A stretch of 64,000 bases of DNA from Macrostomum hystrix (lineage: Eukaryota > Animalia > Platyhelminthes), in the NCBI GenBank assembly GCA_950097015.1, contig CATNEN010000024.1, forward strand, positions 1,984,001 through 2,048,000. The letters run 5' to 3'. The position numbers were made by a program, and so were the translations under genes. This document shows, one piece after another, positions 30,067 to 54,592 of this stretch. How positions within the stretch are numbered: position 1 is the stretch's first letter; each line of letters starts with the position of its first letter. The notes under the pieces were generated by a model. That model searched no databases, was not told the origin of the DNA, and saw only the letters and a program-made list of their open reading frames with translations.

Positions 30067-31510
30067 CAGTGGGATAAACTGAACAGTGGGAGAAACTATA
30101 ACAGTGGGATAAACTGAACAGTGGGATAAACTGAACAGTGGGATAAACTGAACAGAGGGATAGACTGAACAGTGGAATAAACTGAACAGTGGGATAGACT
30201 GAACAGTGGGATAGACTGAACAGTGGGATAAACTGAACAGTGGGATAAACTATAACAGTGAGATATTTATATTTATATACTAATAGTTATAAACTGAACA
30301 GTGGGATAGACTGAACAGTGGGATAAACTGAACAGTGGGATAAACTATAACAGTGGGATAAACTGAACAGTGGGATAAACTGAACAGAGGGATAGACTGA
30401 ACAGTGGGATAAACTATAAATGTGAGATATTTATATTTATATACTAATAGTTATAAACTGAACAGTGGGATAGACTGAACAGTGGGATAAACTGAACAGT
30501 GGGATAAACTGAACAGTGGGATAAACTGAACAGTGGGATAGACTGAACAGAGGGATAGACTGAACAGTGGAATAAACTATAACAGTGGGATAAACTGAAC
30601 AGTGGGATAAACTGAACAGTGGGATAAACTGAACAGAGGGATAGACTGAACAGTGGAATAAACTATAACAGTGGGATAAACTGAACAGTGGGATAGACTG
30701 AACAGTGGGATAAACTGAACAGTGGCATAGGCTGAACAGTGGGATAAACTGAACAGTGGGATAAACTGAACAGTGGGATAAACTGAACAGTGGGATAGAC
30801 TGAACAGTGGGATAGACTGAACAGTGGGATAGACTGAACAGTGGGATAAACTGAACAGTGGGATAGACTGAACAGTGGGATAAACTGAACAGTGGGATAA
30901 ACTGAACAGTGGGATAAACTGAACAGTGGGATAAACTGAACAGTGGGATAGACTGAACAGTGGGATAGACTGAACAGTGGGATAAACTGAACAGTGGGAT
31001 AAACTGAACAGTGGGATAGACTGAACAGTGGGATAGACTGAACAGTGGGATAAACTGAACAGTGGGATAAACTGAACAGTGGGATAGACTGAACAGTGGG
31101 ATAAACTGAACAGTGGGATAAACTGAACAGTGGGATAGACTGAACAGTGGGATAAACTATAACAGTGGGATAAACTGAACAGAGGGATAGACTTGACAGT
31201 GGGATAAACTGAACAGTGGGATAAACTGAACAGAGGGATAGACTTGACAGTGGGATAAACTGAACAGTGGGATAAACTATAACAGTGGGATAAACTGAAC
31301 AGTGGGAGAAACTATAACAGTGGGATAAACTGAACAGTGGGATAAACTGAACAGAGGGATAGACTTGACAGTGGGATAAACTGAACAGTGGGATAAACTG
31401 AACAGTGGGATAAACTGAACAGAGGGATAGACTTGACAGTGGGATAAACTGAACAGTGGGATAAACTATAACAGTGAGATATTTATATACTAATAGTTAT
31501 AAACTGAAAA
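30067..31510. repeat. Minisatellite, 17-bp unit (tgggataaactgaacag), ~80 copies, with a thrice-repeated AT-rich interruption
   Basis: Tandem periodicity; the agatatttatat...actaatagttataaa insert occurs near 30260, 30425 and 31478. Confidence 0.95.
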
Positions 31511-32220
31511 TTGGTTTATAAACGGTTTGATAAAATGAAAAGGCAATAGGGTTACACGTCAAACAATTTGAAGAAGTTGCAAGAGTGCAGCAGACAGAAG
31601 AAGCTCTTTCTTAGAATCGCAAGTTCTCGCATCGAGTCGCAAAGTGCCAAAAAAGAGGCGAGGGGAAATCTAAATCGAGCGAAGTAAAAGGAATAAATCA
31701 GGTTCTGGGCTGCCAGTTCTCGTTAGCGCTTGTGTAGCCAGATCCCCGGAGACTAGGAGGAAGAAGCAGATAGCCCGCCCCGCTGTCCCAGGCGAGCCCC
31801 GATGGGGGATCGAATTTGAAGTTCACAAGGCAAACATGGCCAAGTTCGTCAGTGCTTTACTAGCTATAGAAACCGCAGACACTAAATGGCTCCTCAACAG
31901 CTGTACACAGCCTTTGGAAGCTTAGCTGCAGCTGTGTCACCGGCTCTACATCTGGCCCAACTGAATTAGCATTTTACCTATCATTATATCATTCAATTAA
32001 AGCTCTGCGATCTTTCTTAGTGAAGGTCTTCACTACACTACTAACTGAGTAGCAATGCAAGCTTCCAAAAATATATCAACGAATATAAAGATACTAATTG
32101 TTTTAGATGTAATCGTGCAAACAGCATCAAATCAAGCATGAAGGGTGGACTTTATTTTAAGTTGACTTTAATTGGATGATAAGGAAAAGTGATATGGAGA
32201 CCAGAAGCACACCTGTTAGC

Positions 32221-33523
32221 TCACAGGTAGCCCTGCTCGGCCAGCCAATCAATACCAGCCTCGGAGCCATCGCTGGGCCGGTACTCCAGTCCCACGCAGC
32301 CACTGTAGCCAGAGTCCGCAACCTGCCGCAGCACTGTTGCGTAATCAATGCTACCTGCCGAGTTTGGCTCCTGACGACCGGGCGCCTGAGCAATCTGGAC
32401 GTGACCAGCCAGTGGCAGGTAATTGGGCAACGATGCTAGAGAGCCTTCCAGCATCTGCAGGTGGAAAACGTCAAGCAATAGTCTCAGTCCGGGAACTTCG
32501 CCAACAATCTTCACGGCTTCGCTGTATGAGTTCAGATAATAGTCTGGGATGTTGCTAATTGGTTCAATCACACAGGTGACACCCAGCGGTTCCATTAGGC
32601 GAACAGCTTCGCGCAAACCCTCCAAGTAGGCGAAGCGAGTTTCTGGGCAGCTGCGCGCAGTGGACCGACCAGACATCACGTGCAGCGTCGGACAGGATAG
32701 GGCTGTGCACAGTTCGGCTGCTGCGGACAGGCCTGAGCGAAATTCTTCGCGTCTGGGTGTCGAATTTGGGGTGTTGGGGCTAGCGTGGATTCGATTATGT
32801 AATAATTTGGGGTGGTGGGGCTAGGGTGGGTTTTATAATCCGGGGGTGAAAATTGGGTTTGTGGGCTAAATTTTGATCTGATTAGTAGTGTTGATAGAGA
32901 GCCTGGGCTTCATTATCAGTCTGAAATTTCGGGTAGTGCTAGCTTTGGGTTTGAATAACGGGATTTTGAAATTAGTTTTGGTTTGATTGTCGGAATGTGA
33001 AGCATGTTCGGGTGGCACTCGGAGTACCCTTTAATTACCCGCATATTGCACAGGGTCAAAGGGTCAGGGTCTCTTTTGAGTGCTGTGCATGGTCTGCAAG
33101 CTGCAGGAGTCTTGGTTTACTCCCGATTCGCCGAAATTCCCGATTCGCTGAATTCCCGATTCGCCGAAATTCCCGATTCGCCGAATTCCTGATTCGCCGA
33201 TTCCCGATTCGCCGAATCGGGAGAAACCGGAGTCTTCACTCACGAACCCATGCTAACGAGCTTTGTCCTCACCTATCTAGCAGGGCTGTCAAGCCGAGGT
33301 CCCCAACTGGCGGTCGGCATGGCGGGGCATTGATCAGGGCGAAGCGAATATTGCCAGCGCGCTGACAGGCTTCAGCAAGGCTGACAGGAGTCTCGCCTCC
33401 TGCGTCCATGGCTTCAACATATCGAAAACCTCTCGCTGCAGCTCGACTTAGGCGATCCAAAATGCTCACCTGGTCGGTGAACAGCCAACTAAGATTGGCA
33501 GATAGACGGATAGCAGGTAAGGC
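32221..33523 (-). CDS. HYI: Hydroxypyruvate isomerase (xylose-isomerase-like TIM barrel), exons 33523-33273 and 32752-32221; 260 codons, start Met not encoded locally
   Basis: ALPAIRLSANLSWLF..GFRYVE..LINAPP..GLTAL..REEF..LHVMSG..CVIEPI..LLDVFHLQ..GHVQIAQAPGRQEPNSAGSIDY..GYSGCVGLEYRP matches the HYI family. Phase-2 GT-AG intron is in frame. Confidence 0.92.
33119..33215. repeat. Short intronic repeat (cccgattcgccgaatt-like), ~5 copies
   Basis: Tandem copies in the HYI intron. Confidence 0.8.
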
Positions 33524-33884
33524 CTGTAAAGTTTAGCATCTTTACAAATTACAATAATTTCAGTTCAAGAACTTCATGAATTAGACAAATGATTTGTAGC
33601 TATAAATAGGATAATTAGATGAAACAATCGATTTAAATGTGATCTTCTTATTTTATATTTATATTAATTTACAGTTCAAGATAAAATAAATAGTCGATGA
33701 CCAACAAAATATGAAGAATGATTCAAAAGCCAGTTTTATGGCAGTTTTATTAAGCAATTTTTCAAGCAAATATACATACTTCATACTTATTGTATTTATT
33801 GAAACTTTCTAACAGAAAAGGTTTGAACATTACAGTTTTAATTAAAATACTTTACTATTAAAATACATTACATTACGGATTATA

Positions 33885-34065
33885 TATTTTATAATATAAT
33901 ATAATATAATATTATATATAATATAATATATTATATATTATATAATATATTATTATATTATACAATATATTATTATATATTATATAATATATTATTATAT
34001 ATTATATATTATATAATAATATTAAATTAATTATATAATTATATATATTATATATTTATATATTT
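33885..34065. repeat. AT-only low-complexity tract (tata/taa)
   Basis: About 180 bp almost free of G and C, between KCNQ1 and HYI. Confidence 0.85.

Positions 34066-34954: not shown

Positions 34955-54592
<19,638 letters not shown>

What the first reader, a model, noticed from the sequence alone, without database searches (positions are those of the whole stretch)
33518..33530. HYI has no start codon: a trans-spliced leader AUG may supply the initiator Met
The HYI frame starts at a clean acceptor (ctttacag|GCC TTA CCT GCT ATC CGT CTA TCT GCC AAT) in phase 0, with an in-frame TAA three codons upstream and no ATG before the conserved SANLSWLF. I found no ATG|GT micro-exon (no accat on +) between here and the KCNQ1 stop. 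Adding only AUG gives MALPAIRLSANLSWLF, matching the N-terminus of animal HYI (MAPLRFSANLSWLF). Flatworm spliced leaders end in AUG, which can serve as the initiator (established for schistosomes). That this gene depends on it is inference and assumes a flatworm source.
Basis: partly seen in the sequence, partly recalled or inferred. Interest (0 to 1): 0.75.

Follow-up and report, generated by a model that had tools for sequence, protein, structure and literature searches.

The report
Spliced leader supplies HYI start codon
In this Macrostomum flatworm the hydroxypyruvate-isomerase-like gene has no start codon of its own, and RNA assemblies show the AUG-ending trans-spliced leader joined in frame right before its first codon; this is a confirmed new example of a mechanism already known in flatworms.

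Summary
The HYI-like gene lies on the minus strand and has two exons (33523-33273 and 32752-32221). Exon 1 starts right after a TTACAG acceptor. An in-frame TAA lies three codons upstream, and there is no in-frame ATG before the conserved SANLSWLF motif.

Spliced RNA contigs from four public runs in two studies remove the 520-nt intron. They then continue past 33524 into non-genomic sequence that equals the last 25 nt of the published Macrostomum spliced leader (SL). The junction reads ...UUGCAUG|GCC UUA CCU, which gives M-A-L-P-A-I-R-L-S-A-N. The SL is absent from the window.

All three M. lignano orthologous loci have the same acceptor before the same Ala codon and also lack an ATG. Their database proteins are Met-less or flagged "partial". 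The 37 aligned codons upstream of the first genomic in-frame ATG are under purifying selection (pN 0.15, pS 0.83), and an out-of-frame ATG comes before that Met.

Translation from the SL AUG is inferred, not shown. The mechanism has been known since 2006 in schistosomes. This scan has already confirmed it at other genes of this genome (CHMP6, NDUFA5, SFMBT, PPP2R3C), so interest is modest.

The parts
33524..33529 (-). Trans-splice acceptor TTACAG (AG = 33525-33524). The G at 33524 is the same letter as the last G of the SL, so contigs align through it.
   Evidence: It fits the M. lignano trans-acceptor motif [T/C]TNCAG (PMC8629364).
33533..33535 (-). In-frame TAA in the outron, three codons before exon 1. 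It closes the frame to any unspliced upstream start.
33273..33523 (-). HYI exon 1 (251 nt: 83 codons plus 2 nt). It encodes ALPAIRLSANLSWLF...LTALLD and has no ATG of its own at the 5' end.
33407..33409 (-). First genomic in-frame ATG (codon 39 of exon 1). It lies downstream of the conserved N-terminal strand.
   Evidence: selection test
33418..33420 (-). Out-of-frame ATG (28-codon ORF) that a scanning ribosome would meet before the in-frame Met.
32753..33272 (-). Intron of 520 nt, GT..AG on the minus strand, holding a 16/33-nt tandem repeat at 33121-33217.
   Evidence: Joint 32752/33273 in contigs of X4, X5 and X6; repeat
32221..32752 (-). HYI exon 2 coding part (AP_endonuc_2 TIM-barrel domain); stop TGA at 32223-32221.
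32115..32220 (-). 3' UTR with AATAAA at 32156-32151. Contigs end between 32115 and 32150.
34955..35323 (-). Last coding exon of the upstream KCNQ-type channel gene (stop TGA 34957-34955), 1431 nt upstream of the HYI acceptor.
   Evidence: The same gene order is seen in M. lignano loci L001-L003.

Best explanation
The HYI-like gene is transcribed as a pre-mRNA whose 5' part (the outron) is removed by spliced-leader trans-splicing at the AG at 33525-33524. The roughly 35-nt Macrostomum SL, which ends in AUG, is joined to GCC at 33523. The SL AUG is the first and only AUG upstream of the conserved N-terminus, and it is in frame. It therefore most likely serves as the initiator for a 261-aa enzyme that begins M-A-L-P-A-I-R-L-S-A-N-L-S-W-L-F. 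Shown here: the SL-exon 1 junction, its frame, the lack of a genomic ATG, the intron, the intact family residues, and the same arrangement in M. lignano. Inferred: that ribosomes start at the SL AUG, and that this is the only productive route to the HYI protein.
For:: contigs of runs X4, X5 and X6 (884, 879 and 914 nt, 0-2 mismatches) splice out 32753-33272. They end at 33524 with the loose end CTGCGAAGACTCAATTTATTGCAT (minus-strand sense). X1, from another study, shows the last 15 of these letters. No contig covers 33575-33878; this string plus the shared G is the 3' end of the published SL of M. lignano, M. hystrix and M. cliftonense; the SL is not in the window, even allowing 3 mismatches; there is an in-frame TAA upstream, no ATG|GT micro-exon, and the first in-frame ATG is at codon 39, behind an out-of-frame ATG; exon 1 aligns from profile position 2, and from the Met column, of bacterial and animal HYI. 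M. lignano HYI entries start with APSLRLSANLSW (no Met) or are flagged partial; three M. lignano loci have ctgcag|GCT CCA TCT and no in-frame ATG back to a TAA; for codons 1-38 against M. lignano, pN is 0.148 and pS is 0.83; all 27 invariant columns of exon 2 are kept. Literature: the flatworm SL AUG acts as initiator (Cheng et al. 2006, as cited in PMC9851317, and PMC12582326).
Against: There is no ribosome-profiling or peptide evidence. The RNA evidence consists of assembled contigs, which drop rare isoforms and cannot give proportions, and the runs are only guessed to be RNA, although the excised GT..AG intron shows they are. An SL AUG is in frame by chance in about a third of trans-spliced mRNAs, so frame alone proves little. 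The AUG context has a weak -3 position (U).
Confidence: 0.9

Rival explanations
1. A missed cis-spliced 5' exon with its own ATG, lying between the KCNQ stop and 33524 or further upstream, supplies the Met. The SL form would then be a minor or non-coding variant.
For: Six ATG...GT phase-0 mini-ORFs exist by chance in the 1.4-kb spacer. Contigs cannot exclude rare isoforms.
Against: In all four runs the only loose end at 33524 is the SL. No contig covers 33575-33878, where two of the six candidates lie. The three M. lignano loci have non-conserved upstream DNA but the same acceptor, and their gene models have no Met.
Confidence: 0.04
2. Translation starts at the first genomic in-frame ATG (33409-33407) and gives a protein that lacks the first 38 residues.
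For: It is the only genomic in-frame ATG in exon 1.
Against: The 37 aligned codons upstream of it are under purifying selection (pN 0.148 against pS 0.83). They hold the SANLSWLF strand, with A9 and N10 invariant among homologues. An out-of-frame ATG at 33420 precedes it. The SL AUG is the first AUG on the mRNA.
Confidence: 0.03
3. The HYI acceptor is also used in cis from a GT donor inside the last KCNQ exon. This would give a KCNQ-tail::HYI chimera or mark co-transcription of the two genes, alongside SL trans-splicing.
For: M. lignano UniProt model A0A1I8JS92 (P0022) joins ...GLT to APSLRLS, using ACG|GTGAAC at L001:1883. The window has a phase-0 CGA|GTGAAT at 35104 that would also join in frame (read). 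The gene order KCNQ then HYI is conserved.
Against: P0022 is a computed model. No such loose end is seen at 33524. The two candidate donors are not at homologous positions. The KCNQ exon was outside the stretch I laid reads on, so this was not tested.
Confidence: 0.1

Closest known systems
Flatworm SL 3'-terminal AUG used as initiator methionine (Schistosoma mansoni; Cheng, Cohen, Ndegwa & Davis 2006, J Biol Chem 281:733, as cited in PMC9851317 and PMC12582326); 'slORFs' in the sense of slORFfinder
   Same: The SL ends in AUG. It is trans-spliced to an AG acceptor directly in front of a conserved ORF that has no ATG of its own, and the AUG is in frame.
   Different: The lineage is different (a free-living macrostomorph) and so is the gene (HYI-like TIM-barrel enzyme). 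Here the dependence is shared by two Macrostomum species. Translation was not assayed here, whereas it was in schistosomes.
SL trans-splicing in Macrostomum (Wasik 2015; Wudarski 2017; Ustyantsev & Berezikov 2021, PMC8629364; Wiberg et al. 2023, PMC10468722)
   Same: The same 35-nt SL and the same acceptor motif [T/C]TNCAG. Wiberg et al. already note that the SL's final ATG is a likely start codon.
   Different: Those papers give genome-wide rates (10-30% of genes) and do not describe individual genes that depend on the SL AUG. HYI is not mentioned in the text I searched.
Hydroxypyruvate isomerase / 2-oxo-tetronate isomerase family (TIGR03234, NF043033; PDB 3NGF, 1K77 YgbM)
   Same: AP_endonuc_2 TIM barrel of about 260 aa, with all invariant residues kept.
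   Different: This is a eukaryotic copy with one intron. The exon-wise scores are below the equivalog cut-offs, so the substrate is not assigned.

Membership tests
SL-donated initiator AUG (flatworm type) | The organism's spliced leader ends in AUG | tested here: met
   The loose end ...TTATTGCAT plus the shared G equals the published Macrostomum SL 3' end.
SL-donated initiator AUG (flatworm type) | The SL is joined to this mRNA at a canonical AG acceptor and is not encoded nearby | tested here: met
   Four runs from two studies show it. The SL is absent from the 64-kb window.
SL-donated initiator AUG (flatworm type) | The SL AUG is in frame with the conserved ORF, with no stop between them | tested here: met
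   The junction reads AUG|GCC UUA CCU.
SL-donated initiator AUG (flatworm type) | No other AUG can give the conserved N-terminus | tested here: met
   TAA three codons upstream. The first in-frame ATG is at codon 39, behind an out-of-frame ATG. Codons 1-38 are under purifying selection.
SL-donated initiator AUG (flatworm type) | Translation is shown to begin at the SL AUG | not testable with these tools
   This needs ribosome profiling, N-terminal proteomics or a reporter.
Hydroxypyruvate isomerase / OtnI family | Xylose-isomerase-like TIM barrel domain (PF01261) | tested here: met
   Exon 2 scores 95.5 bits, E 5.5e-27.
Hydroxypyruvate isomerase / OtnI family | Reaches the NCBIfam equivalog cut-off (TIGR03234 353 bits; NF043033 325 bits) | tested here: inconclusive
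The exons were searched apart, giving 130.9 + 26.5 and 122.3 + 34.7 bits. Both sums are below the cut-offs.
Hydroxypyruvate isomerase / OtnI family | Family-invariant residues kept | tested here: met
   27 invariant columns in exon 2 (including H23, E62, D93, H96, Q98, HVQI116-119, E127, E155) and 10 in exon 1.
SL-resolved operon (KCNQ-HYI) | Same strand, downstream gene trans-spliced, repeat-adjusted spacer under 1 kb (criterion of PMC8629364) | tested here: inconclusive
   Same strand, and HYI is trans-spliced. Stop-to-acceptor distance is 1431 nt. With a putative KCNQ AATAAA at 34669-34664 and the 185-nt AT repeat removed, the spacer is about 0.9-1.0 kb, which is borderline. It is about 2 kb in M. 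lignano. No polycistronic RNA was examined.

The most novel reading that the evidence does not exclude
The HYI acceptor has two uses. It mainly takes the SL, making trans-splicing an obligatory and evolutionarily conserved on-switch for HYI translation. It may also take a phase-0 donor inside the last KCNQ exon. In that case the channel gene and the enzyme gene would be co-transcribed and could yield a KCNQ-tail::HYI chimera, as one M. lignano gene model proposes.
Probability: 0.1. Interest if true: 0.45.

Novelty: new member of a known kind. Interest (0 to 1): 0.3.

Why it matters
The finding adds a well-documented case, conserved across two species, of a housekeeping-type enzyme gene that cannot be translated correctly without trans-splicing. 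It also explains why public M. lignano HYI records are Met-less, flagged "partial", or fused to the upstream channel gene. Annotation pipelines for flatworm genomes should append the SL AUG at trans-splice acceptors. The mechanism itself is established, and this scan has already confirmed several other cases in the same genome, so the conceptual gain is small.

Tried and rejected
- **SL in the window:** I searched the window for the SL with up to 3 mismatches and found 0 hits, so the leader is not a nearby cis exon.
- **ATG|GT micro-exon:** I looked for one between 33524 and 34955 and found none. Six longer ATG...GT phase-0 candidates exist but have no RNA support in the part covered.
- **Exon 1 alone:** Pfam and PDB sequence searches gave no hit. 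NCBIfam did hit.
- **Last KCNQ exon:** Pfam gave no hit. PDB phmmer gave a weak KCNQ1 match.
- **Bacterial promoter/terminator scan of the spacer:** at chance level, and not applicable to a eukaryote.
- **P0001 contig look-up:** it failed. Cluster members P0017-P0019 gave the M. lignano loci instead.
- **Cheng et al. 2006:** the paper is not held, so it is cited through later papers.
- **M. lignano gene ids:** supplement searches for them found nothing.
- **Earlier scan notes:** none exist on HYI.
- All searches were exon by exon, by reference.

Full report
**Observation**

The finding's coordinates hold the start of a minus-strand exon. The minus strand reads TAA (33535-33533) ACT TTA CAG | GCC (33523-33521) TTA CCT GCT ATC CGT CTA TCT GCC AAT. 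The translation is *TLQ|ALPAIRLSANLSWLF....

- The nearest upstream ATG (33539-33537) is out of frame.
- ACCAT is absent from the + strand between 33524 and the upstream gene's stop at 34955, so there is no ATG|GT micro-exon.
- Inside exon 1 the first ATG (33420) is out of frame and opens a 28-codon ORF. The first in-frame ATG is codon 39 (33409-33407).

**Gene model**

- Exon 1 is 33523-33273 (251 nt).
- The intron is 33272-32753 (520 nt, GT..AG).
- The coding part of exon 2 is 32752-32221, with TGA at 32223-32221.
- AATAAA lies at 32156-32151.

The intron joint is seen directly in contigs of three runs. Exon 2 carries the xylose-isomerase-like TIM-barrel domain PF01261 (E 5.5e-27). Both exons hit the NCBIfam hydroxypyruvate isomerase and 2-oxo-tetronate isomerase models, and exon-1 residue 5-6 aligns to profile position 2. 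The closest solved structures are 3NGF and 1K77/YgbM, and exon 2 starts at their residue 85-89. Together these show that exon 1 plus one Met makes a complete N-terminus.

All columns that are invariant among the animal and bacterial homologues are kept, so the gene looks intact. Because exons had to be searched apart, the equivalog cut-offs were not reached. I call the product HYI-like and leave the substrate open. The joined two-exon protein was not built or searched.

**Source organism**

The best protein hit is Macrostomum lignano "putative hydroxypyruvate isomerase", 79% identical over exon 2. The window therefore comes from a Macrostomum species other than M. lignano. Earlier notes of this scan name M. 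hystrix; I did not verify the species.

**RNA evidence**

I laid four public runs from two studies on 32000-33878. The run kinds are only guessed, but the contigs lack the GT..AG intron and are therefore RNA-derived.

- In X4, X5 and X6 a single contig each (884, 879 and 914 nt, 0-2 mismatches) covers exon 2, skips 32753-33272, and covers exon 1 up to 33524.
- Each of these contigs then continues for 24 letters that do not match the genome. In mRNA sense they read CTGCGAAGACTCAATTTATTGCAT.
- X1, from the other study, shows the last 15 of these letters at the same place.
- The G at 33524 is both the G of the acceptor AG and the last G of the leader, so the mRNA reads ...TTGCATG|GCCTTACCT.
- This is exactly the 3' end of the 35-nt SL published for M. 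lignano (PMC8629364), and of the SLs assembled for M. hystrix and M. cliftonense (Table S3 of PMC10468722).
- The leader does not occur in the 64-kb window even with three mismatches.
- The acceptor TTACAG fits the M. lignano trans-splice motif [T/C]TNCAG.
- No contig covers 33575-33878, and no other kind of loose end is reported at 33524.

The SL holds a single ATG, its last three letters. The first AUG of the mature mRNA is therefore in frame with HYI and gives MALPAIRLSANLSWLF, in a product of 261 aa.

**Independent support from a second species**

- The M. lignano cluster has eight members. The UniProt entries start with APSLRLSANLSW and have no Met, and three NCBI entries are flagged "partial".
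- I fetched the three NCBI loci (L001-L003). All read ...caactgcag|GCT CCA TCT CTG CGC CTC TCC GCC AAC, with no in-frame ATG between the acceptor and an upstream TAA.
- The DNA upstream of the acceptor is not alignable between the species, while the coding part is.
- The KCNQ-like gene lies upstream on the same strand in all four loci.
- For the 37 aligned codons that precede the first genomic in-frame ATG, Nei-Gojobori counts give pN 0.148 and pS 0.83. This is as constrained as the rest of exon 1, where pN is 0.133 and pS is 0.58.

These codons are therefore translated, which a start at Met39 cannot explain.

**Mechanism**

- Shown: trans-splicing of the AUG-ending SL to 33523, in frame; no genomic alternative; conservation of the arrangement.
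- Inferred: that ribosomes initiate at the SL AUG. The inference rests on the scanning rule (it is the first AUG, 32 nt from the cap) and on the experimental precedent in Schistosoma mansoni. There, the SL AUG was reported in frame in 28% of trans-spliced transcripts, and more than 40 cDNAs needed it (Cheng et al. 2006, as summarised in PMC9851317; also PMC12582326, and PMC5832876).
- From established knowledge of N-terminal methionine excision, Met-Ala would normally lose the Met.

**Rivals**

- **A missed cis exon.** This is made unlikely by the uniform SL loose ends and the Met-less M. lignano models. Contigs cannot exclude a rare isoform.
- **A Met39 start.** This is contradicted by the selection test, by the conserved first strand of the barrel, and by the intervening out-of-frame ATG.
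- **A cis joint from KCNQ.** The M. lignano model A0A1I8JS92 joins the KCNQ tail to HYI through ACG|GTGAAC (L001:1883). The window has a phase-0 CGA|GTGAAT at 35104 that could do the same. I could not test this because the single reads call had been used on the HYI stretch. It would be an addition to the SL route, not a replacement for it.

Whether KCNQ and HYI form an SL-resolved operon is borderline by the 1-kb criterion of PMC8629364, and it was not tested.

**Novelty**

The mechanism is established, and Wiberg et al. already remark that the Macrostomum SL's ATG is a likely start codon. This scan has confirmed the same mechanism at other genes of the same genome. HYI is a new and well-supported member, with the added point that the dependence is shared by two Macrostomum species and explains faulty public gene models.

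Noticed in passing
L001:1883 with L001:3968 (M. lignano NIVC01001051.1); window 35102-35105: UniProt A0A1I8JS92 (P0022) is a chimeric model. It joins the KCNQ C-terminal tail to HYI through a GT donor (ACG|GTGAAC) inside the last KCNQ exon. The window has a phase-0 CGA|GTGAAT in its KCNQ exon that would also join in frame to 33523. It could be a real read-through splice or an annotation artefact.
   Followed up: partly
window 33121-33217: A 16/33-nt tandem repeat (TCCCGATTCGCCGAAT) sits in the HYI intron. It attracts many divergent RNA contigs at summed word depths of about 60-170, against 12-25 for the HYI exons, and these contigs have loose ends on both sides. The repeat family is therefore transcribed from other places in the genome.
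   Followed up: no
window 35872-39600 (also 35386-35613 and 31000-31481): There are very long arrays of 20-22-nt and 17-nt tandem repeats. The 20-mer array (GGATATCATAATTGTGTCAG) spans several kb upstream of the last KCNQ exon, probably inside a KCNQ intron, and produces spurious repetitive ORFs on the + strand.
   Followed up: no
window 33879-34064: A 185-nt AT-only microsatellite-like block lies in the KCNQ-HYI spacer. It matters for repeat-adjusted intergenic distance in operon calls.
   Followed up: no
window 34955-35323 (minus): The last exon of a KCNQ-type potassium channel matches KCNQ1 helix D (residues 560-621 of 7XNI) at E about 1e-3. The KCNQ-HYI gene order is conserved in three M. 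lignano loci.
   Followed up: partly
window 32149, 32322, 32430, 32715: Single-letter differences between the window and RNA contigs (A>G, C>T), each seen in one or a few runs. They are most simply allelic or strain variation.
   Followed up: no
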